Shown: one piece after another, positions 8,980-46,099 of the stretch | How the letters are laid out: each line of letters opens with the position of its first letter | Position numbering within the stretch: the stretch's first letter is position 1 | Sequence record: KT919972.1 | Direction: 5' to 3' (one strand) | DNA: 64,000 nt | Position numbers and translations under genes: made by a program | The notes under the pieces: generated by a model | Told to the model about the DNA's origin: nothing | The model's database searches: none | The model's input: the letters and a program-made list of their open reading frames with translations, nothing else

Positions 8980-9984
8980 ATGCAAGCTATCATCACAAAC
9001 GGTCTTTTTCGTAAAACTGAAATCAACGGCACTTACACTCTTATCGAACGAGTTTGGAATAGTTCAGATGCCGGTGAGAAAAACGGTCGTATGAAGATTA
9101 TGCTTGATGGTGCAGTACGTACTATTCGCGTAAACAAAGAAGACGTACAGTACGTAGACGAAGCTGACGCATCACAAACAGCAGTACCTGCACTTGCACC
9201 AGTCGTTGAAGCTGAAACTGAAGAACAAATTGCAGAGCGTATCACTGAAGCGTTCGAAGCGATGGACATCTTTACTGTCGGTGCAATCGCGGGTCACGTT
9301 AAATCGCTACTTATCTCAGGTGCAGCGGGTGTGGGTAAGACGTTCACACTTGAACGCGAGTTAAATCAAGCTCAAGAACGCGGTGATATCACATTCAAGA
9401 AAGTTGCAGGTACATGTTCTGGTATCGGTCTGTTCACAAAACTATGGGAATGCCGTCACCCTGATTCAGTTCTTCTTCTAGATGACGTAGACGTTTTCAA
9501 AGATGAAGATCAAATGAACGTTCTAAAAGCAGCACTAGACACTGGTGAAGAGCGTTGGGTTTCATGGGCGAAAGCAAGTTCTTACTTAGAAGAGCAAGGC
9601 ATCGATCAAGAATTCTTGTTTGAAGGTACAGTAATCTTTATCTCAAACAAAGACTTTGACCGTGAACTTGAAGCGAATACTAAACTTTCACCGCACTTCA
9701 GCGCACTGATTTCACGTAGCATCTACCTTGACTTAGGTGTACATACAAAAGAAGAAATCATGGTTCGCATCAAGCAAGTTGTAGCAGCAACTACAATGCT
9801 AGAAGATCTAGGTCTAAACGCAGCACAAATCGCTGACATGATAGCTTGGATTGAGAAACACATGCTTGAACTACGTGCTCTATCGCTTCGTACATGTTTA
9901 CACATTGCTGATATGATGCTAACATCACCGACTAAATGGGAAATGCTTGCTAAGATGACTATGCTATCTAAGAAGCGTAAATAA
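8980..9984 (+). CDS. AAA+ family ATPase
   Basis: Walker A GAAGVGKT, Walker B LLLDD, FISN sensor-like segment, SRS. Confidence 0.85.
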   Translation: MQAIITNGLFRKTEINGTYTLIERVWNSSDAGEKNGRMKIMLDGAVRTIRVNKEDVQYVDEADASQTAVPALAPVVEAETEEQIAERITEAFEAMDIFTVGAIAGHVKSLLISGAAGVGKTFTLERELNQAQERGDITFKKVAGTCSGIGLFTKLWECRHPDSVLLLDDVDVFKDEDQMNVLKAALDTGEERWVSWAKASSYLEEQGIDQEFLFEGTVIFISNKDFDRELEANTKLSPHFSALISRSIYLDLGVHTKEEIMVRIKQVVAATTMLEDLGLNAAQIADMIAWIEKHMLELRALSLRTCLHIADMMLTSPTKWEMLAKMTMLSKKRK

Positions 9985-29912: not shown

Positions 29913-29940
29913 AAAAAAGGGCGCTATTTGCGCCCTTTTG
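29913..29940 (-). terminator. Rho-independent terminator
   Basis: AAAAAAGGGCGC-TATTT-GCGCCCTTTT (+ strand view). Confidence 0.8.
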
Positions 29941-30454
29941 TTTTTTGTTTCTTTGCTTTTCGTTTAGCTCGTCTAAGTTCTTTTCGTTTAGCGATTTTAT
30001 CTGCTCTTCGAACTGCGTCGTAATCAGCAGCACAAGACGCAGCAAACGCATCAGGTTTGAACACGGGCTCTTGACCAACATATCCCAATATAGTACCTTT
30101 AGCTTCGTTATAGGCAACGTGAGATTTGTGTGTGGGGTCAGGGTTGATGTCAACGTGAACTTCAAAGCCTCTAGTACCGCACATTGGCTTAACCATTAGT
30201 GCAGTTTCACCCGCTTTGTATACTTCATTCATCAATCGACTTCTGATACCATCTTTACATGATAAGTATGCAGGTTCAGTCTCAACTGCTTTAAACACTT
30301 GAGCACCTTTACTACCTTCAAGATGAATTATGATCACAGTCGCGTAACTAATCATGTCACTTTTACGCTTACTATCACACCCAACGTATATTGTGCTATT
30401 TGGATGACTGTTATTGATAGCTGTTTCTATCGCTTCCCAATCGAACATTTTCAC
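29924..30454 (-). CDS. RNase H-fold protein, YkuK/DUF458-like
   Basis: IYVGCDS...YATVIIIH...SRLMNEV...EVHVDIN...KP.AFAAS.AAD; basic C-terminal tail. Confidence 0.75.
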   Translation of the reverse strand: MKMFDWEAIETAINNSHPNSTIYVGCDSKRKSDMISYATVIIIHLEGSKGAQVFKAVETEPAYLSCKDGIRSRLMNEVYKAGETALMVKPMCGTRGFEVHVDINPDPTHKSHVAYNEAKGTILGYVGQEPVFKPDAFAASCAADYDAVRRADKIAKRKELRRAKRKAKKQKTKGRK

Positions 30455-30497: not shown

Positions 30498-31934
30498 TTA
30501 AAAACTGTAGCGTTCGACGCCTACAGTTTTCATCATGATCTTGATTGGCTCAAGCTCACCACCCAACAGTGAAGTCAAGATAGATGGGCTACAACCAGAT
30601 ACCAGTGCAGTACCCGCTTCACCAGCTTTAACCGGAACGTTGCCAAGACGACCACGAATGTTCCAGAAGACCAGTTGTGGCATTTCATAACCAGCACGTG
30701 CGTACTTGGCTTTGATTGCATCGAAGTTCGCAGGTTCACCGCGACCGTACCAACCACCACCAGTGTTTGCTTGATCGAATTCCATGTCACTCATGATAAG
30801 CAACTTGGTTGGCATATCTTCTTGTGAAAGATTTGCACGCTTCGCACGCTCTAGCAGAACATCAAAGCACTTACCGATGTTCGTACTCATGTCTTCGCCT
30901 GAACGATTCATGTTATCAAGACGCTCTTTCAATGAGCTACCGCGCAACTGGTGGAAGTGCGGGTCGCTTGAGAACGAAATGAATTGATCTTTGAAGATGC
31001 CTTCATTGCGTTCAGCAACATAAATCCCAAGAGACATTGCAACTTGCTTACAAGTCACACCTGAATGGTCTGTACCTGCGTTGATTGGCGTGCTCATAGA
31101 GCCAGACACGTCAACAACAGGGATGATGCGTTCATCAGAACCTTCCATGTAGTTTGGCAGAGCTTTCCATTGCTCGTTCGCTACAGACGCATTACCGTGA
31201 CTAACGCTCTTAACGACATCGTATGGGAACAATGCGCCAGCGTTGATCTTCGCTTCACCTTTTTGAAGTGACTCGATGTAGCTTGTGTAACGAGCTGAAG
31301 CGTTACGACCGAATGCTTGTTGATAACGAGCAGACGCTACAGAAGGCAACTTACCGAAGTCGATTGCATCCCATTTTTGCGCACACATCTTCTGCTCAAC
31401 AGTGTCAGACAGAAGCGACAGAATCTTACGCCACTGCTTCGCAGTCACGCCAAGAGACTTGATTGTGCGCTTGAACACATGACCGTTTTTGCTGTTTTCA
31501 CGTGGGAACCACTTCGCAGCAAGACCATTCTTGTCATTGACAATTGCGTTCGACCACATTGTAATCGCATCTTTTTCAAGACGTGTACCGAAAGCAGAAA
31601 TCAAGTCATCGTAACGACCTAGTTCTGGAATTTTCGACATTACAGCACGAGCTACGTCAGGCTGTTCATTACAAAGTTTAGTGAATAGAGTACGGAAAGT
31701 ACCACGTTCACCCGCACCACCTCGAACATCACGAGACCACAAAAGAATGCGAGTCGCTAGTTCTGGGTTTTCTGCAAACGCACGACCGAACAGTGTTTTA
31801 GACTGATCGTTGCCACGCATAGCAGCAATACCGAAGAACAAGTTTAGACACTCGTTACCTGAAGTGCTGTGAGTAACTGCACCGTTTGCTGTGCGTGAAT
31901 CGTTTGTTTGCATTGCGTTCATAAATACTGACAT
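30498..31934 (-). CDS. DUF2828 family helical-domain + vWA protein (Ro60/TROVE-like architecture)
   Basis: RDVRGGAGER, GRYDDL, AAKWFPRE in the helical part; vWA MIDAS DVSGSM, LLIMSDMEFD, LVFWN. Confidence 0.88.
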   Translation of the reverse strand: MSVFMNAMQTNDSRTANGAVTHSTSGNECLNLFFGIAAMRGNDQSKTLFGRAFAENPELATRILLWSRDVRGGAGERGTFRTLFTKLCNEQPDVARAVMSKIPELGRYDDLISAFGTRLEKDAITMWSNAIVNDKNGLAAKWFPRENSKNGHVFKRTIKSLGVTAKQWRKILSLLSDTVEQKMCAQKWDAIDFGKLPSVASARYQQAFGRNASARYTSYIESLQKGEAKINAGALFPYDVVKSVSHGNASVANEQWKALPNYMEGSDERIIPVVDVSGSMSTPINAGTDHSGVTCKQVAMSLGIYVAERNEGIFKDQFISFSSDPHFHQLRGSSLKERLDNMNRSGEDMSTNIGKCFDVLLERAKRANLSQEDMPTKLLIMSDMEFDQANTGGGWYGRGEPANFDAIKAKYARAGYEMPQLVFWNIRGRLGNVPVKAGEAGTALVSGCSPSILTSLLGGELEPIKIMMKTVGVERYSF

Positions 31935-31970
31935 TGTTCATTTCCTCATAATTAATTGCTGTAAAATGTC
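31930..31970 (-). promoter_or_regulatory. 5'-leader hairpin covering the DUF2828 start codon
   Basis: GACATT-TTACAGCAA-TTAATTATGAGGAAATGAAC-AATGTC; the 3' strand contains the ATG; T4-type early promoter GTTTACA..TATAAT (-10 at 31983-31988) just upstream. Confidence 0.6.
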
Positions 31971-32024
31971 TTTGATGAAGTGATTATACGCGAATTTTAA
32001 TGCATGTAAACACTTTTTTTTAAT

Positions 32025-32671: not shown

Positions 32672-33033
32672 AGATATTCCTTAATTGGTTTTGAAAAATG
32701 TCGAATGCATGAACTATCGAGACGAGGACGACCATCACCGTCAATATCTGGTAGCGTGTACCCATCATTGAATGGTTGACCGCTTTCTTTCGCGAGTTCA
32801 TAAGCATCAGCGCGATTGAAGTATTCACCACAATAATTGATGAATCCCTGCCCACGATCACCAAGTTCGCTTCGATGTTCATATGTACAGCCAAGTTCTT
32901 TCAATAGCTTAAACACGCCTTGCATGTTTCGACCAAAATGGCAGCTATCTGCAACAACAATATCCCTCTCTTCGCCATTTGGTAAAGTGACTCTAATTGC
33001 ATTTGCAGCAGCAGAAATTACGTTTAAGTGCAT
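32668..33033 (-). CDS. conserved-looking phage hypothetical protein
   Basis: QGFIN..GEYFNR.DAYELA..SGQ pattern; coupled to neighbours. Confidence 0.65.
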   Translation of the reverse strand: MHLNVISAAANAIRVTLPNGEERDIVVADSCHFGRNMQGVFKLLKELGCTYEHRSELGDRGQGFINYCGEYFNRADAYELAKESGQPFNDGYTLPDIDGDGRPRLDSSCIRHFSKPIKEYL

Positions 33034-33371
33034 GTATCTTGCCTCATAAAGATAGAACCCACACGTTTATATTGAAGTGTACTCATCAACATCATAGTCA
33101 TCTTAGAGTGAGCAACAGGGTTACTCGTTACTAGAACAACTGTGCGTGGGAAGTTACGATGATCAATTGCATGAGAGAGAATATCATATCCCTCATGACC
33201 AAGAGCACCGCCTAGATCATTGTCCATGAATAAAGTAATATCTGTAAGATTCGTATGTTTGACGAATTTCATACCGTCTTCATACGTACGCAAAACAAGC
33301 TTCTGATCTGCGGAAATTTCAGGCGCAGTGAAATTATCGATATCACGCATATCATCAATCATTACAAACAT
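33024..33371 (-). CDS. cyclic-phosphate-processing receiver-like domain protein
   Basis: MIDDMR...LFMDNDLG...EGYDIL...LVTSNP..H..M matches the xxDDxR / DHDLG / GYD / HS.NP signature. Confidence 0.7.
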   Translation of the reverse strand: MFVMIDDMRDIDNFTAPEISADQKLVLRTYEDGMKFVKHTNLTDITLFMDNDLGGALGHEGYDILSHAIDHRNFPRTVVLVTSNPVAHSKMTMMLMSTLQYKRVGSIFMRQDTCT

Positions 33372-36829: not shown

Positions 36830-37073
36830 AGACATTCGAGAAGTGTTTTATCGTCTTTCCTTAAATCTCATTTGACTATAACGATGTTTCTCATCGGAAA
36901 AATACCCATGATTCGGCATGAGTCCTATTTCGTTTGACAGTACGAACACCGTCTTAATGGTCATTTCCTACCATGAGAATGCGTCAGGCTCACGTCATCA
37001 CTGAGAAAGCAGCTAGTGCGCCTCATTACTATTAAAGTTTGCTTTGATTTGTAATGATTGCTGTACAATGTCT
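36830..37073 (-). ncRNA. structured ncRNA A (244 nt, helix+ACAGCAA family)
   Basis: ends pair (AGACATT/AATGTCT); ACAGCAA follows the 5' strand; 39-nt 3' block shared with ncRNA B. Confidence 0.65.
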
Positions 37074-37084
37074 TATTGCGAATT

Positions 37085-39091: not shown

Positions 39092-39319
39092 AGACAATAC
39101 CGAAGTGTTTTTTCGTCTTTTGCATAAATCGGAGTTGACTAGCTTATTGTTTCTCAACAAGCAAATATCGTCTGTTTCAGCGACGCGCCTATCTGACTAT
39201 TTCTAGACAGAGAGAATCTTTCCTTTCAAGCTGCGCCTAAGCAAGCTCAGGTTAAAATCAGCCCAGGTTAAGATCATCACTTCTTTTAAGTAATTTCAAT
39301 TGTTTGCTGTATATTGTCT
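39092..39319 (-). ncRNA. structured ncRNA B (228 nt, helix+ACAGCAA family)
   Basis: ends pair (AGACAATA/TATTGTCT); ACAGCAA follows the 5' strand; 3' block shared with ncRNA A. Confidence 0.65.
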
Positions 39320-39382
39320 CTCTCACCATGCTCGTGATATGCCGAAGCAAAGTATCATTTGTCGCATGATAAGAGCTTAATA

Positions 39383-40179: not shown

Positions 40180-40254
40180 TGGTGCTCCCGTTCGGAATCG
40201 AACCGAATTCTGCGGTTTACAAGACCGCTGCATCGCCATCAATGCTTCAGGAGC
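40180..40254 (-). tRNA. tRNA-Thr(TGT)
   Basis: GCGGT-CTTGTAA-ACCGC, CCA. Confidence 0.93.
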
Positions 40255-40260
40255 GTAACT

Positions 40261-40375
40261 GAGTGTTATTACTAGCGTCGTCCAGACCAGTGATACCGAC
40301 ACTGAAGAGGAATCGAACCTCGAACTTTTCTTTTCATCAGAAGAATATTAGTAAATTGTTTGCTGAAAACACTCT
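40261..40375 (-). ncRNA. circularly permuted tRNA-mimic (YrlA-like) RNA
   Basis: closing GAGTGTT/AACACTC + TCAGCAA; then T arm GAGG-TTCGATT-CCTC, looped acceptor-like stem CAGTG/CACTG, GG-containing D-like hairpin. Confidence 0.65.
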
Positions 40376-40383
40376 ATGGTATT

Positions 40384-40457
40384 TGGCTGGGGATAACAGA
40401 TTCGAACTGATACCAACGCATTCAAAGTACGTTATGCTGCCTTTACACCAATCCCCA
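40384..40457 (-). tRNA. tRNA-Gln(TTG)
   Basis: T1-A72, loop CT-TTG-AA, G73, CCA. Confidence 0.92.
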
Positions 40458-40621: not shown

Positions 40622-40697
40622 TGGCGCTTCATGTTGGACTCGAACCAACGACTCTCTGATTAACAGTCAGACACTCTACCAACTGAGTTAATGAAGC
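40622..40697 (-). tRNA. tRNA-Asn(GTT)
   Basis: TCTGA-CTGTTAA-TCAGA, G73, CCA. Confidence 0.93.
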
Positions 40698-40698
40698 G

Positions 40699-40773
40699 TG
40701 GCGGGCGTGGAGAATTTCGAAATCTCGACTTGCAAGTTAACAGCTTGCTACTCTGCCTCTGAGTTACACACCC
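40699..40773 (-). tRNA. tRNA-Asn(GTT), second copy
   Basis: GCAAG-CTGTTAA-CTTGC, G73, CCA. Confidence 0.88.
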
Positions 40774-40785
40774 TTGAATTTAAAC

Positions 40786-40843
40786 AGTAATCCTTTTTGC
40801 TTTTTCCAAATAAAAGTTTTGTATTGTTTGCTGTAAGATTACT
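40786..40843 (-). ncRNA. minimal helix+ACAGCAA RNA (58 nt)
   Basis: AGTAATCT/GGATTACT closing helix, TACAGCAA, internal CTTTT-ATTTGGA-AAAAG hairpin. Confidence 0.55.
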
Positions 40844-41065: not shown

Positions 41066-41164
41066 TGGCGGAAGACTAGGGATTCGAACCCTAACATCAC
41101 CTCCCGGTGACCGACGGTTTTCAAGACCGTTGCCGCTACCCAGAATCTTTCGGCTAAGCCTTCC
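41066..41164 (-). tRNA. tRNA-Ser(TGA), enlarged D loop
   Basis: ACGGT-CTTGAAA-ACCGT, long variable arm, 99 nt, CCA. Confidence 0.9.
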
Positions 41165-41350: not shown

Positions 41351-41436
41351 TGGTGGAGCGTAGAGGAATCGAACCTCTCTACCCGTTAAGGGTCAGGGAT
41401 TTACAGTCCCCTGTCTCACCTTGAGACGTACGCTCC
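41351..41436 (-). tRNA. tRNA-Tyr(GTA)
   Basis: loop CT-GTA-AA, long variable arm, CCA. Confidence 0.93.
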
Positions 41437-43327: not shown

Positions 43328-43443
43328 TGGTAGTCGGGGCTGGATTCGAACCAGCGACCACGTGCTTAACAGGCAATTGAAGGAGTGCTGGAGCGATACT
43401 TGTCAGTATCATTCTTCGTGCTCTACCACTGAGCTACCCGACT
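43328..43443 (-). ncRNA. tRNA-Asn(GTT) body with a 41-nt structured insertion at position 28/29
   Basis: removing 43376-43416 gives a regular 75-nt cloverleaf with CGTGC-CTGTTAA-GCACG and CCA. Confidence 0.8.
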
Positions 43444-45330: not shown

Positions 45331-45455
45331 TGGAGGAGAGTACGGGATTTGAACCACGTGACAAAAAGATTTACCTAGTTATTAAGGTTTGCAGCATGAA
45401 TGCTTGTCAGTATTCTTTAACATTCTTTTGCTCTACCAGACTGAGCTAACTCTCC
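45331..45455 (-). ncRNA. tRNA body with the anticodon loop replaced by a ~54-nt module
   Basis: GGAGAGT acceptor, D arm, AAAGA/TCTTT stem enclosing GAATACT-GACA-AGCATTC-ATGCTGCAAA, T arm, TCCA. Confidence 0.7.
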
Positions 45456-45461
45456 AGAATT

Positions 45462-45580
45462 TGAAGGTGAAGTGCAGGACTCGAACCTGCGACCTCCGGC
45501 GTGCATGTGAATGCAGAATGAAATCTTATCAGACTTCGTTTTTTTTGGCCGGCATTCTAACCAACTGAACTAACTTCACC
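45462..45580 (-). ncRNA. Asp-like tRNA body with the anticodon loop replaced by a ~47-nt module
   Basis: D arm GTTC-AGTTGGTTA-GAAT, CCGGC/GCCGG stem enclosing GAAGTCT-GATA-AGATTTC-ATTCTGCAT; no CCA. Confidence 0.7.
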
Positions 45581-45594
45581 AATGTAAAAACATA

Positions 45595-45719
45595 TTGAGC
45601 AGGGTGCAGGATTCGAACCTGCGTCACGATCTTGGAAATGATATGCTAAATTGATTGCAGAATACAAACTTAACAGCTTGCGTTTATGCTACGTGTGCTA
45701 GCCACTACACCAACCCTGC
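45595..45719 (-). ncRNA. Gly-like tRNA body with a 49-nt insertion at position 28/29
   Basis: GCAGGGT acceptor, U73, residual loop ATTTCCAA; insert holds a hairpin + ATTCTGCAA; 17-bp extended acceptor duplex. Confidence 0.75.
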
Positions 45720-45793
45720 TCAATATGTTCTTGAGAGTGCTTGTGATTAACCACAAGCACCAAAAATCCTCTAGTTATATTTGCCTTAGCTAA

Positions 45794-45952
45794 TCAACAC
45801 AACCTGAAATCGTGCGCTTTATTTACGGGATGAATGACCCGTTCGCATATGATTAGCGCAAAAGTATGAATGCGCACCTTTTCTTCTTCAATGTCCAAGG
45901 CAAAGAGGACGATGAATACTAGTGCGAGAAGATATACAATCAAATTGTTCAC
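45794..45952 (-). CDS. possible small membrane protein
   Basis: GAG SD + GTG start, hydrophobic N-terminus. Confidence 0.4.
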   Translation of the reverse strand: MNNLIVYLLALVFIVLFALDIEEEKVRIHTFALIICERVIHPVNKAHDFRLC

Positions 45953-45976
45953 CTCGCTTGATAAGTGAGAGTACAT

Positions 45977-46099
45977 TGGTCGAGTGTAACGGAATCGAAC
46001 CGTTCCCACGATCTCCCTATGATATGCGTAAATTGGTTGCTGAATATAATCATGTCTGATTACAGTATGCTACGTGTGCTGCCACTACACCAACACTCG
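45977..46099 (-). ncRNA. Pro-like tRNA body (AGG) with a 49-nt insertion at position 28/29
   Basis: C1-G72, A73, CCA; loop AT-AGG-GA; insert holds a hairpin + ATTCAGCAA; 21-bp extended acceptor duplex. Confidence 0.75.

What the first reader, a model, noticed from the sequence alone, without database searches (positions are those of the whole stretch)
40261..40375. Circularly permuted tRNA mimic with YrlA-like T-arm, acceptor, D-arm order
Seen (- strand): GAGTGTT-T-TCAGCAA...a short hairpin...GAGG-TTCGATT-CCTC (T arm), CAGTG-TCGGTAT-CACTG (stem closed by a loop where an acceptor stem would be), GTC-TGGAC-GAC (GG-containing D-like loop)...AACACTC closing the ends. It sits between tRNA-Gln and tRNA-Thr and has no CCA. 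Established: YrlA Y RNAs are permuted tRNA mimics whose ends lie at the anticodon-arm position, whose acceptor stem is closed by a loop, and whose terminal stem binds Ro60. Inference: this is the permuted counterpart of the tRNA chimeras at 43.3-46.1 kb and the closest structural link to known Y RNAs, though its protein-binding end carries CAGCAA rather than the canonical Ro60 bulged-helix signature.
Basis: partly seen in the sequence, partly recalled or inferred. Interest (0 to 1): 0.78.

Follow-up and report, generated by a model that had tools for sequence, protein, structure and literature searches.

The report
Phage Y-RNA-like permuted tRNA mimic
A conserved 114-nt structured RNA inside a vibriophage tRNA gene array is a worn-down, circularly permuted tRNA look-alike of the bacterial Y RNA (YrlA) type. 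The same window encodes the Ro60-like protein it most likely binds, which points to a widespread phage RNA-protein particle whose RNA partner had not been defined.

Summary
At window 40261-40374 (- strand; Vibrio phage phi-Grn1, KVP40-like) lie a 7-bp terminal stem, an invariant UUCAGCAAAC, a hairpin, a canonical T arm, a 5-bp hairpin and a small GG-loop hairpin. Thirty related phages conserve the element, with compensatory changes.

The YrlA-like reading is supported by new evidence:
- Better-preserved relatives in other large-phage tRNA arrays share the 5' module. After the T arm they carry an acceptor-like hairpin and a textbook D arm.
- Rfam's YrlA model matches those relatives full length, but below threshold (35-43 bits; threshold 69).
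- The phi-Grn1 copy itself gets no YrlA hit.
- The window encodes, 8.3 kb away on the same strand, a DUF2828+vWA protein (30498-31934). Its predicted fold matches phage Ro60.
- Homologues of this protein accompany the RNA family (21 of 36 RNA-bearing loci against 0 of 84 without the RNA), and the RNA often abuts the gene.
- The stem-plus-CNGCAA module recurs in a 56-nt mini RNA (40787-40842) and in the Ro-like gene's own leader. Two of the long "tRNA chimeras" carry the 16-mer UUCNGCAANCAAUUUA exactly and a third holds CUGCAAAC; they are the opposite circular permutation.

Best reading: a Y RNA for a phage Ro60-like protein, released by tRNA processing. Verdict: new variant of a known kind. 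Binding and function are untested.

The parts
40368..40374 (-). 5' strand of the terminal (closing) stem, GAGUGUU
   Evidence: Pairs with 40261-40267. Almost invariant among close relatives: one U-A to U-G change. All 7 pairs change on both sides across 16 diverse members.
40352..40367 (-). Single-stranded junction motif UUCAGCAAACAAUUUA, the proposed binding site for the Ro60-like protein
   Evidence: UUCAGCAAAC (10 nt) is invariant in 9 variants; the AAUUUA tail varies in KVP40 and nt-1. CAGCAAA sits 2 nt after the stem in unrelated phage lineages, including copies not selected by the search pattern. The same 16-mer recurs exactly at 45647-45662 and 46029-46044.
40328..40345 (-). V hairpin UUCUU-loop-AAGAA, upstream of the T arm
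   Evidence: The stem is invariant and the loop varies among close relatives. All 5 pairs covary across the family. It corresponds to the 'V' stem-loop of YrlA.
40307..40321 (-). T arm: 4-bp stem with T loop UUCGAUU
   Evidence: Stem variants GAGG/CCUC, GGGG/CCCU, AGGG/CCCU and CGGG/CCCG. The loop UUCGAnU is kept.
40288..40304 (-). Acceptor-position hairpin (AS): 5 bp, 7-nt loop UCGGUAU
   Evidence: Stem variants CAGUG/CACUG, CAGAG/CUCUG and UAGAG/CUCUA. In relatives this is a 6-8 bp hairpin abutting the T stem.
40277..40287 (-). D-like hairpin GUC-UGGAC-GAC with an invariant GG
   Evidence: Only a U-A to U-G change among close relatives. It occupies the place where relatives have canonical D arms such as UAGCUCAACUGGUAGAGC.
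40261..40267 (-). 3' strand of the terminal stem, AACACUC, preceded by an A-rich junction (40268-40276) and followed by AGU
   Evidence: The 3' tail (A/U)G(U/A) recurs in the family.
30498..31934 (-). Gene phiGrn1_0037, 478 aa: Ro60-like protein (HEAT-repeat ring plus vWA domain with DxSxS), the proposed partner
   Evidence: Pfam DUF2828 2.7e-29 and DUF7788 2e-46. AF2 model pLDDT 77.5. Foldseek PDB top hits are 9kop 'Trove domain' (E 7.8e-8) and 9l5y Ro60 of Thermus phage phiLo (E 4e-7), both full length, TM 0.55. Homologues co-occur with the RNA family.
40787..40842 (-). Second, short RNA with the same module (GUAAUCU-UA-CAGCAAAC ... GGAUUAC, then UGUU); it has no T arm
   Evidence: Conserved in 31 phages. 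KVP40 carries a compensatory U-A to C-G change, and phage F86 has CUGCAAAC.
31930..31970 (-). Leader of the Ro60-like gene folded as the same module: GACAUU-UUA-CAGCAAUU, a loop holding the Shine-Dalgarno sequence, then AAUGUC containing the start codon
   Evidence: Conserved in VH7D and KVP40. Equivalent modules lie just upstream of the gene in Campylobacter phage PC14 and many IMG/VR loci.
45598..46099 (-). Two long tRNA-likes (45598-45719 and 45980-46099) that carry the same 16-mer inside an anticodon-arm insert; they are the opposite circular permutation

Best explanation
The element is a Y RNA of the YrlA class: a small non-coding RNA whose middle mimics the T-arm/acceptor/D-arm elbow of a tRNA in permuted order, and whose paired ends plus an adjacent single-stranded motif form a protein-binding module.

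Proposed mechanism, step by step:
1. It is transcribed as part of the polycistronic tRNA array. It is released as an RNA of about 115-125 nt by the enzymes that mature its neighbours: RNase P cutting at the 5' end of tRNA-Thr, and 3' maturation of tRNA-Gln. This step is inferred from position.
2. The 7-bp terminal stem and the flanking UUCAGCAAAC are bound by the phage's Ro60-like ring protein phiGrn1_0037. This is inferred from co-occurrence, from the motif recurring in the gene's own leader, and by analogy with the GNCGAA/CGAA motif of known Y RNAs.
3. The tRNA-like part serves as a handle for a tRNA-recognising or RNA-degrading host factor. The particle would then redirect or block RNA turnover, repair or a tRNA-directed defence during infection, as Ro60-Y RNA-PNPase complexes do. 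This step is speculative.
4. The protein probably also binds the look-alike module that encloses its own start codon and so limits its own translation. This is a hypothesis.
For: Structure:
- The helices are conserved and covary.
- No conserved ORF spans the element, and no promoter or terminator lies within it.

Family:
- Model R1 finds full-length relatives in tRNA arrays of many unrelated large phages, always on the tRNA strand.
- It also finds them in a Felixounavirus and a mycobacteriophage.
- Relatives show T arm, acceptor-like hairpin, UA and a canonical D arm.
- They get full-length sub-threshold YrlA hits lying between complete tRNAs, so they are not tRNA-dimer artefacts.

Protein:
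- A Ro60-like fold is encoded on the same strand in the window.
- Among 120 loci fetched by the DNA pattern alone, all 21 that carry the protein have an R1 hit, and none of the 84 loci without the RNA carry it (Fisher p = 4e-14).
- The RNA abuts the gene in at least 7 loci.
- In mycobacteriophage LeBron the RNA lies just downstream of the 'RNA-binding protein' gene and has GGACUCU-AG-CAGCAAUU.

Motif:
- It recurs in the mini RNA, in the gene leader and in the chimeras.

Literature:
- YrlA features (PMC4201824).
- Phage phiLo Ro60 binds two upstream Y-like RNAs through a stem plus a bulge with CGAA, and engages PNPase (PMC12135203).
- Bas63 gp130 is Ro60-like, sits next to the tRNA genes and counters the ppl defence; the authors guessed that some 'tRNAs' are Y RNAs (bioRxiv 10.1101/2024.10.10.617714).
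- In Listeria phage CKA15, abundant ncRNAs lie upstream of an Rsr-like gene (PMC12282133).
Against: - The phi-Grn1 copy gets no YrlA hit, and no Rfam hit of any kind, at E<=10.
- Its D-like hairpin is only 3 bp with a 5-nt loop, and it lacks U8/A14 equivalents.
- Its T stem has 4 bp and is offset by 2 nt from the next hairpin, so a tRNA-like elbow is not assured.
- The canonical Ro60 motif GNCGAA is absent.
- The protein gene is 8.3 kb away, whereas YrlA typically lies within 4 kb of its Ro60 gene.
- The protein resembles Ro60 only at fold level (TM 0.55); PDB sequence and profile searches did not reach Ro60.
- There are no expression or binding data for this phage.
- The loci in the co-occurrence test are partly redundant (about 12 distinct lineages).
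- L023 has two good RNA copies but no detectable protein gene in the 14 kb held.
Confidence: 0.7

Rival explanations
1. It is an inert remnant: a decayed tRNA, or fused tRNA halves, left as spacer in the array, with no function of its own.
For: It lies in a tRNA array that also holds pseudo-tRNAs. It has only a T arm with clear tRNA identity. The MFE is not better than shuffles, and Rfam finds nothing.
Against: Compensatory changes keep four helices. A 19-nt stretch is invariant across relatives that are 81% identical overall. The same architecture recurs in unrelated phages next to a specific protein gene.
Confidence: 0.05
2. It is a tRNA-like decoy or sponge that acts without the Ro60-like protein. 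For example, it could soak up a host anticodon nuclease or another tRNA-directed defence enzyme. The 5-bp/7-nt-loop hairpin (U[U/C]GGUAU, anticodon-loop-like) or the T arm would be the bait.
For: The hairpin between the T arm and the D-like hairpin has anticodon-arm dimensions, with U33- and purine-37-like positions, and its loop is nearly invariant: one U/C position differs among 9 variants. Phage tRNA arrays are thought to offset tRNA-cleaving defences (PMC7824862).
Against: In other lineages this hairpin varies in length and loop (3-7 nt). What is conserved family-wide is instead the stem plus the CAGCAAA module, which tracks the protein gene. The rival does not explain the same motif in the protein's own leader.
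Confidence: 0.12
3. It is a processing or architecture element of the precursor: a tRNA-like handle (T arm plus terminal stem) that guides RNase P, RNase E or the CCA enzyme and helps neighbouring tRNAs mature. This would resemble the T4 stable RNAs C and D, which are co-processed with tRNAs.
For: It sits 9 nt after tRNA-Gln and 6 nt before tRNA-Thr. T4 rnaC also ends in a T arm plus an acceptor-like strand within its tRNA cluster.
Against: R1 does not hit the T4 RNAs. The T arm is not adjacent to the terminal stem, so it does not form the acceptor/T minihelix that RNase P reads. Short family members lack the T arm altogether yet keep the stem and motif.
Confidence: 0.08
4. It is an ordinary-order, D-arm-less tRNA-like RNA. 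On this reading the terminal stem is the acceptor, the V hairpin is the anticodon arm, and the two hairpins after the T arm are lineage-specific inserts. It would not be a permuted mimic.
For: The 7-bp terminal stem followed by UU resembles an acceptor stem plus U8. Some members (L093, L030) have little or nothing after the T arm.
Against: The V loop varies in length (6-8 nt) and sequence. A linker of 8-10 A-rich nt always separates the last hairpin from the 3' strand. Well-preserved members have a canonical D arm after the T arm, and full-length YrlA alignments.
Confidence: 0.05

Closest known systems
YrlA (Y RNA-like A) of Salmonella Typhimurium, Mycobacterium smegmatis and mycobacteriophages; Rfam RF02553; Chen et al. 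2014 (PMC4201824)
   Same: The ends pair into a stem with an adjacent conserved single-stranded motif. The V, T, acceptor-like and D stem-loops come in that 5'-to-3' order, and the T loop is canonical. The partner is a Ro60-type ring protein with a vWA domain, encoded on the same strand. Relatives of the element score 35-43 bits, full length, with RF02553.
   Different: The element itself is not detected by RF02553. The motif is UUCNGCAAAC, not GNCGAAN0-1G. The D arm is reduced to 3 bp with a 5-nt loop, and the acceptor-like hairpin is 5 bp and offset from a 4-bp T stem. The RNA sits inside a tRNA array, 8.3 kb from the protein gene. The protein belongs to Pfam DUF2828/DUF7788; the scan returned no other family for it.
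Yrl1/Yrl2 with Ro60 of Thermus phage phiLo (PMC12135203; PDB 9KOP, 9L5Y)
   Same: Phage-encoded Ro60-like protein with phage-encoded Y-like RNAs. The RNAs have a 5'-3' stem flanking a large bulge with a short conserved motif. It is the best structural match of the phi-Grn1 protein model.
   Different: The RNAs lie directly upstream of the gene, and their motif is CGAA. About 15% sequence identity to the phi-Grn1 protein. No tRNA array context is described.
Bas63 gp130 (Felixounavirus), a Ro60-like counter of the ppl defence (bioRxiv 10.1101/2024.10.10.617714)
   Same: Felixounaviruses carry a 45-46% identical homologue of phiGrn1_0037, lying just upstream of their tRNA genes. One of them holds a family member, and a mini copy, in the tRNA array.
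   Different: No RNA partner was identified there; the authors only conjectured that some 'tRNAs' are Y RNAs. I examined phage humlepung, not Bas63 itself.
Phage T4 stable RNAs, species 1 (rnaC) and species 2 (rnaD)
   Same: Small stable RNAs co-transcribed and co-processed with phage tRNAs. rnaC carries a T arm.
   Different: No match to model R1 and no CAGCAAA module. In rnaC the T arm abuts the 3' acceptor-like strand, so the order is normal rather than permuted.
Deinococcus radiodurans Yrn1 with Rsr and PNPase (the RYPER complex)
   Same: A Y RNA with a T-arm-like hairpin that tethers a Ro60 ring to an exoribonuclease. This is the model for step 3 of the proposed mechanism (as summarised in PMC4201824 and PMC12135203).
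   Different: The opposite orientation of the T and D elements, and a canonical Ro60-binding helix. It is cellular, not viral.

Membership tests
YrlA / Rfam RF02553 | Scores at or above the family's gathering threshold (69 bits) with the covariance model | tested here: not met
   No hit at E<=10 on 40230-40400. Relatives reach 35.5-43.3 bits, full length but below threshold. The only YrlA hit in the window (45430-45494, 32 bits) is a tRNA-dimer junction.
YrlA / Rfam RF02553 | T stem-loop with the tRNA T-loop consensus | tested here: met
   UUCGAUU loop. The 4-bp stem has two covarying pairs.
YrlA / Rfam RF02553 | Order V, T, acceptor-like (AS) and D stem-loops, 5' to 3', with the RNA ends paired | tested here: met
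   All five helices are present in that order. The order is kept across the family.
YrlA / Rfam RF02553 | Near-invariant D stem-loop (4-bp stem, loop with GG, U8/A14-type residues allowing tRNA tertiary pairs) | tested here: inconclusive
   Only a 3-bp stem and the 5-nt loop UGGAC. GG is invariant, but no linker nucleotides precede the stem. Relatives have canonical D arms at this position.
YrlA / Rfam RF02553 | GNCGAAN0-1G motif near the 5' end (the presumed Ro60 contact) | tested here: not met
   The motif is absent. UUCAGCAAAC occupies the position.
YrlA / Rfam RF02553 | Encoded within about 4 kb of, and on the same strand as, a Ro60 (TROVE) gene | tested here: inconclusive
   Same strand, but 8.3 kb away. 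The protein is Ro60-like by fold, and Pfam returned only DUF2828/DUF7788. In many relatives the RNA abuts the gene.
YrlA / Rfam RF02553 | Bound by Ro60/Rsr in vivo; pseudouridine-55 and dihydrouridine made by TruB and DusA | not testable with these tools
   This needs immunoprecipitation and modification mapping.
tRNA (Rfam RF00005 / ARAGORN) | Cloverleaf in normal order with an anticodon arm; detected by the tRNA models | tested here: not met
   ARAGORN tRNAs in the window but none here. There is no RF00005 hit at E<=10.
Ro60 / TROVE proteins (for the partner phiGrn1_0037) | HEAT-repeat ring followed by a vWA domain with a MIDAS DxSxS motif | tested here: met
   The model is helical over roughly residues 28-258 and alpha/beta over 270-446. 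DVSGSM at 275-280 is invariant in 10 homologues. Full-length Foldseek matches to 9kop and 9l5y, probability 1.00.
Ro60 / TROVE proteins (for the partner phiGrn1_0037) | Sequence-level match to the TROVE family or to solved Ro60 proteins | tested here: not met
   Pfam returns only DUF2828 and DUF7788. phmmer and a profile search of PDB sequences do not reach Ro60.

The most novel reading that the evidence does not exclude
The stem-plus-UUCNGCAAAC module marks the RNA clients of a separate, phage-wide branch of Ro60-like proteins (the DUF2828/vWA type, present in at least 711 phage records). In phi-Grn1 one protein would serve a small regulon:
- a permuted tRNA mimic;
- a minimal 56-nt RNA;
- up to five tRNA bodies that carry the motif (or, in two of them, only a weaker variant) in the anticodon arm, the opposite circular permutation;
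- the protein's own mRNA leader.

The particle would use tRNA-shaped handles to intercept a host tRNA- or RNA-directed defence. That would explain why a Felixounavirus homologue counters the ppl system.
Probability: 0.4. Interest if true: 0.85.

Novelty: new variant of a known kind. Interest (0 to 1): 0.72.

Why it matters
Ro60-Y RNA particles are known in animals, bacteria and a few phages. The DUF2828-type Ro-like protein, however, is found in hundreds of phages: Felixounavirus, KVP40-like and Aeromonas T4-like phages, and Campylobacter, Listeria, Staphylococcus and mycobacterial phages. I found no paper that defines its RNA partner. Two recent papers only guess at one (Bas63 gp130; Listeria phage CKA15).

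This element, its relatives and the shared motif give a concrete and testable candidate for the RNA partner and its binding site. They also show that some unannotated gaps and 'pseudo-tRNAs' in phage tRNA arrays are Y-like RNAs. Finding the same RNA design in two circular permutations within one genome is a rare natural experiment on how tRNA mimicry and protein binding combine. If the particle is an anti-defence device, it links phage tRNA arrays to Ro60 biology.

Tried and rejected
- **Rfam on the element itself:** nothing at E<=10.
- **IMG/VR scan with the invariant 17-mer:** apart from VH7D and KVP40 it returned only chance matches in unrelated sequence, some apparently coding. A scan with T loop, GGTATC and GTC gave 5 loci, not followed up.
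- **T4 rnaC/rnaD as homologues:** fetched and searched with R1, no hit.
- **My crude closing-stem statistic** (G-U pairs allowed, wide distance window) had high background, 38 against 7-19 in controls. I do not rely on it.
- **Hammerhead reading** of CUGAUGA...GAAA in the V loop: not conserved in KVP40, VH7D or nt-1.
- **Other readings by inspection:** a k-turn at the junction and promoter readings of the motif do not fit the sequence. The promoter scan finds no site in the element on the - strand.
- **Coding potential:** only artefactual ORFs that run through the tRNAs.
- **Sequence-level link of the protein to solved Ro60:** none. phmmer hits only designed armadillo repeat proteins, and the profile search finds nothing.
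- **The 514-aa ORF between the two RNA copies in L023:** not a Ro-like protein.
- **Listeria phage AG20 locus:** no R1 hit.
- **Literature:** Burroughs & Aravind 2016 and the supplements of Chen et al. 2014 are not held. No expression data for KVP40-like phages were found.
Full report
**Source and setting.** The window is Vibrio phage phi-Grn1 (KT919972.1, same coordinates), a KVP40-like T4-related phage of 248 kb. The finding lies on the - strand inside an array of 28 tRNA genes, in the 129-nt gap between tRNA-Gln (40384-40457) and tRNA-Thr (40180-40254). No record among 30 related phages annotates an RNA there; a few place a hypothetical CDS over the gap.

**Observation.**
- terminal stem 40368-40374 with 40261-40267;
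- UU+CAGCAAAC at 40358-40367;
- hairpin UUCUU/AAGAA, 40328-40345;
- T arm GAGG-UUCGAUU-CCUC, 40307-40321;
- hairpin CAGUG-UCGGUAU-CACUG, 40288-40304;
- GUC-UGGAC-GAC, 40277-40287.

There is no CCA. Only artefactual ORFs running through the neighbouring tRNAs overlap it. No promoter- or terminator-like site lies within it on the - strand; the nearest strong candidates bracket the array at about 42.2 kb and 36.9 kb.

Folding energy is unremarkable (z = -0.72). Comparison is decisive:
- 30 records keep the element at 81-100% identity.
- In 7 distinct variants every proposed pair forms. The T stem appears as GAGG/CCUC, GGGG/CCCU, AGGG/CCCU and CGGG/CCCG. The next hairpin appears as CAGUG/CACUG, CAGAG/CUCUG and UAGAG/CUCUA.
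- RNAalifold predicts the same five helices.
- The first 19 nt (stem plus UUCAGCAAACAA) are invariant.

**A family, not a one-off.** A covariance model of the seven variants (R1) was run on loci that an IMG/VR scan for TTCAGCAAAC-N25-50-GGTTCGA had fetched (over 120 matches, many of them chance).
- R1 aligned dozens of them full length. Each had a 7-bp closing stem of different sequence placed exactly 2 nt upstream of CAGCAAA, for example GGUUGGU/ACCAACC, GGAACAU/GUGUUCC and AGACCUU/AAGGUCU.
- Several copies differ from the search pattern (UACAGCAAAU, UGCAGCAAAA). They were found only because they lay in the flanks, so they are independent evidence.
- All sit in tRNA arrays on the tRNA strand.
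- In 16 diverse members 95.8% of cells pair, and 20 of 24 pairs change on both sides, including all 7 pairs of the closing stem. This far exceeds the shuffled and slid controls. The alignment is model-fitted, which favours the structure.

**Permuted tRNA mimic.** The better-preserved members settle the architecture. After a 5-bp T arm comes a 6-8 bp hairpin directly abutting the T stem. Then come UA and a textbook D arm: UAGCUCAACUGGUAGAGC in L024, UAGCCAAGUUGGUAAGGCA in L023, UCGCCUAAUGGUAGGGCA in L030. An A-rich linker and the 3' closing strand follow. This is the order AC-stem 3' strand, V, T, acceptor (closed by a loop), D, AC-stem 5' strand. It is the YrlA design of Chen et al. 2014.

Rfam's YrlA model (RF02553, threshold 69 bits) matches these RNAs below threshold, three of them over the full length of the model:

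| Locus | Coordinates | Bits | E-value |
|---|---|---|---|
| L024 | 2776-2892 | 43.3 | 2.5e-6 |
| L049 | 2242-2364 | 43.3 | 2.5e-6 |
| L024 | 1946-2059 | 37.0 | 0.00016 |
| L125 | 9825-9887 (partial) | 40.9 | 1.2e-5 |
| L023 | 9600-9668 (partial) | 35.5 | 0.00045 |

The E-values are those of the 57-kb search. The L024 hits I checked lie between complete tRNAs, so they are not the tRNA-dimer artefact that paper warns of. The one YrlA hit in the window, 45430-45494, is such an artefact.

The Vibrio and Aeromonas T4-like copies are worn-down versions: a 4-bp T stem, a 2-nt gap, a 5-bp/7-nt-loop hairpin, and a 2-3-bp D-like hairpin that keeps GG. This explains why the phi-Grn1 copy gets no Rfam hit. 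I considered reading the RNA as a normal-order, D-arm-less tRNA-like molecule. I rejected that reading because of these relatives.

**The partner protein.** Many of the RNA-bearing loci contain a 480-530-aa ORF on the same strand. Nine of ten tested are Pfam DUF2828 + DUF7788.
- The window has a homologue, phiGrn1_0037 (30498-31934, - strand, 478 aa, annotated hypothetical). It is 32-46% identical to those ORFs.
- Ten homologues share an invariant DVSGSM, a MIDAS-type DxSxS motif.
- An AlphaFold2 model (pLDDT 77.5, pTM 0.73) finds as its only strong PDB matches the 'Trove domain' 9kop (E 7.8e-8) and Ro60 of Thermus phage phiLo, 9l5y (E 4e-7). Both align over the full length, with TM 0.55.
- Viral predicted structures named DUF2828, vWFA and 'Ro-like RNA binding protein' also match.
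- Sequence searches of the PDB do not reach Ro60. The link to Ro60 therefore rests on fold and domain architecture.
- tblastn finds the protein in 711 phage records. Several are annotated 'Ro-like RNA binding protein' or 'RNA-binding protein'.

**RNA-protein association.** The 120 loci were chosen by DNA pattern alone.
- 36 have an R1 hit and 21 carry the protein. All 21 are among the 36, and none of the other 84 carries it (Fisher p = 4e-14). The loci are partly redundant, representing roughly a dozen lineages.
- The RNA and the gene are on the same strand. In L093, L125, L131, L116, L082, L030 and L108 the RNA ends within about 20-250 nt of the gene start.
- Felixounavirus humlepung has the gene directly upstream of its tRNA array. 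It has a family member in an unannotated gap (L147 5394-5523, 32.7 bits) and a T-arm-less mini copy (L147 4920-4977).
- Mycobacteriophage LeBron has GGACUCU-AG-CAGCAAUU...T arm directly downstream of its 'RNA-binding protein' gp53. That RNA gets a full-length YrlA hit of 39.8 bits.
- In Aeromonas phage Ah1 the RNA and the gene are about 10 kb apart, much as in phi-Grn1.

**The motif elsewhere in the window.** Three further observations make the stem-plus-CNGCAA module the likely protein-binding site.
1. *A mini RNA.* A short RNA at 40787-40842, between tRNA-Asn and tRNA-Trp, has GUAAUCU-UA-CAGCAAAC...GGAUUAC-UGUU and no T arm. It is conserved in 31 phages, with a compensatory U-A to C-G change in KVP40 and CUGCAAAC in phage F86.
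2. *The gene's own leader.* The leader of phiGrn1_0037 folds as GACAUU-UUA-CAGCAAUU, then a loop holding the Shine-Dalgarno sequence, then AAUGUC, which contains the AUG (31930-31970). It lies downstream of a TTTACA-N16-TATAAT promoter. VH7D and KVP40 conserve it. Equivalent modules with different stems, and with CAGCAAA, CGGCAAAC or CCGCAAAC, sit just upstream of the gene in Campylobacter phage PC14 and many IMG/VR loci.
3. *The chimeras.* The 16-mer UUCNGCAANCAAUUUA occurs exactly three times in the window, all on the - strand: in the element and in two of the 113-122-nt 'tRNA chimeras' (45647-45662 and 46029-46044). Fourteen specified bases in 128 kb of sequence give a chance expectation of roughly 5e-4 by my arithmetic. 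The segment from the motif through V to the T arm aligns between them. In the chimeras the acceptor, D and T arms are normal. The helix 5' of the motif is a closed hairpin with an anticodon-like loop.

**Mechanism.**
- *Shown:* a conserved, covarying structure; the YrlA-like architecture of the family; a Ro60-like protein gene in cis; strong co-occurrence; recurrence of the motif.
- *Inferred:* release from the tRNA precursor by tRNA-processing enzymes; binding of the protein to the stem and motif, by analogy with GNCGAA/CGAA in known Y RNAs (PMC4201824, PMC12135203); autoregulation through the leader.
- *Speculative:* the biological role.

Known Ro60-Y RNA particles gate or tether exoribonucleases such as PNPase. 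Phage phiLo's particle binds host PNPase and damps its activity (PMC12135203). The Felixounavirus homologue gp130 counters the ppl defence (bioRxiv 10.1101/2024.10.10.617714). Listeria phage CKA15 makes very abundant ncRNAs just upstream of its Rsr-like gene (PMC12282133). The neighbours of phiGrn1_0037 are an RNase H-like DUF458 protein (29924-30448) and a cREC domain protein (33024-33371). The latter family is predicted to process cyclic phosphates and is linked to RNA ligases (PMC7824862). Both fit an RNA repair or turnover context.

**Comparison and novelty.** The element works like a YrlA-type Y RNA. As a member of RF02553 it fails two tested features, the model score and the GNCGAA motif. 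Two others, the D arm and the distance to the gene, are inconclusive. It is best filed as a new variant of a known kind: a Y-like RNA family with its own binding motif, tied to the DUF2828 branch of Ro60-like proteins and embedded in tRNA arrays. I found no paper that defines this RNA. Two papers conjecture Y RNAs for the same protein family without identifying them.

**Limits.** There are no expression or binding data. The D-like hairpin of the phi-Grn1 copy is weakly supported. The co-occurrence test is not a full genome census. One 424-kb phage locus has two RNA copies but no protein gene in the 14 kb held.

Noticed in passing
window 40787-40842 (-): A 56-nt T-arm-less RNA with the same module (GUAAUCU-UA-CAGCAAAC ... 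GGAUUAC-UGUU) lies between tRNA-Asn and tRNA-Trp. It is conserved in 31 phages, with one compensatory change in KVP40.
   Followed up: yes
window 31930-32010 (-): A sigma-70-like promoter (TTTACA-N16-TATAAT) is followed by a leader that folds as the same stem+CAGCAA module. The fold encloses the Shine-Dalgarno sequence and start codon of the Ro60-like gene, which suggests autoregulation.
   Followed up: partly
window 43331-43443, 45334-45455, 45466-45579, 45598-45719, 45980-46099 (-): Five long tRNA-likes have normal acceptor, D and T arms and a 46-54-nt insert at the anticodon arm. The insert holds an anticodon-like hairpin followed by a related motif: two carry the exact 16-mer UUC(A/U)GCAAnCAAUUUA, a third has CUGCAAAC, and two have only weaker variants (CUGCAUUC, CCAGCAC).
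   Followed up: partly
window 39205-39323 (-) and 36898-37078 (-): Two more unannotated stretches in the array contain UACAGCAA(A/U)C next to possible closing helices. The second follows the last tRNA-Ser and ends in a terminator-like hairpin (36904-36923). I did not check them in relatives.
   Followed up: no
window 29924-30448 (-) and 33024-33371 (-): The neighbours of the Ro60-like gene are an RNase H-like DUF458 protein and a cREC (cyclic-phosphate-processing receiver) domain protein. DUF458 homologues also occur in four other RNA-bearing loci (L027, L089, L090, L127).
   Followed up: partly
window 40180-40254, 40625-40773, 41066-41151, 41351-41436: The GenBank record omits tRNA-Thr, the second tRNA-Asn, tRNA-Ser(UGA) and tRNA-Tyr. 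It labels the GTT-anticodon tRNA at 40625-40697 as Asp. ARAGORN calls all of these; Rfam's tRNA model confirms tRNA-Thr and both tRNA-Asn but reports no hit over the Ser(UGA) and Tyr spans.
   Followed up: partly
window 45430-45494 (-): Rfam's YrlA model gives a 32-bit partial hit spanning the T arm of one long tRNA-like and the D arm of the next. This is the tRNA-dimer false positive described by Chen et al. 2014.
   Followed up: yes
L147 5394-5523 and 4920-4977 (Escherichia phage humlepung, Felixounavirus): Unannotated family members, one long with a T arm and one short without, lie in the tRNA array about 0.5-1 kb downstream of the Ro60-like 'vWFA protein' gene. They are candidates for the RNA partner of Bas63 gp130-type proteins.
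   Followed up: partly
L024 4214-4281: A sub-threshold match (38.4 bits; threshold 44) to the HDV-like ribozyme model RF02682 lies inside another phage's tRNA array.
   Followed up: no
window 40293-40299 (-): The loop of the acceptor-position hairpin, U(U/C)GGUAU, has anticodon-loop form (U33-like, purine-37-like). Apart from that one U/C position it is invariant in the 9 variants. Other lineages have short, variable loops there.
   Followed up: no
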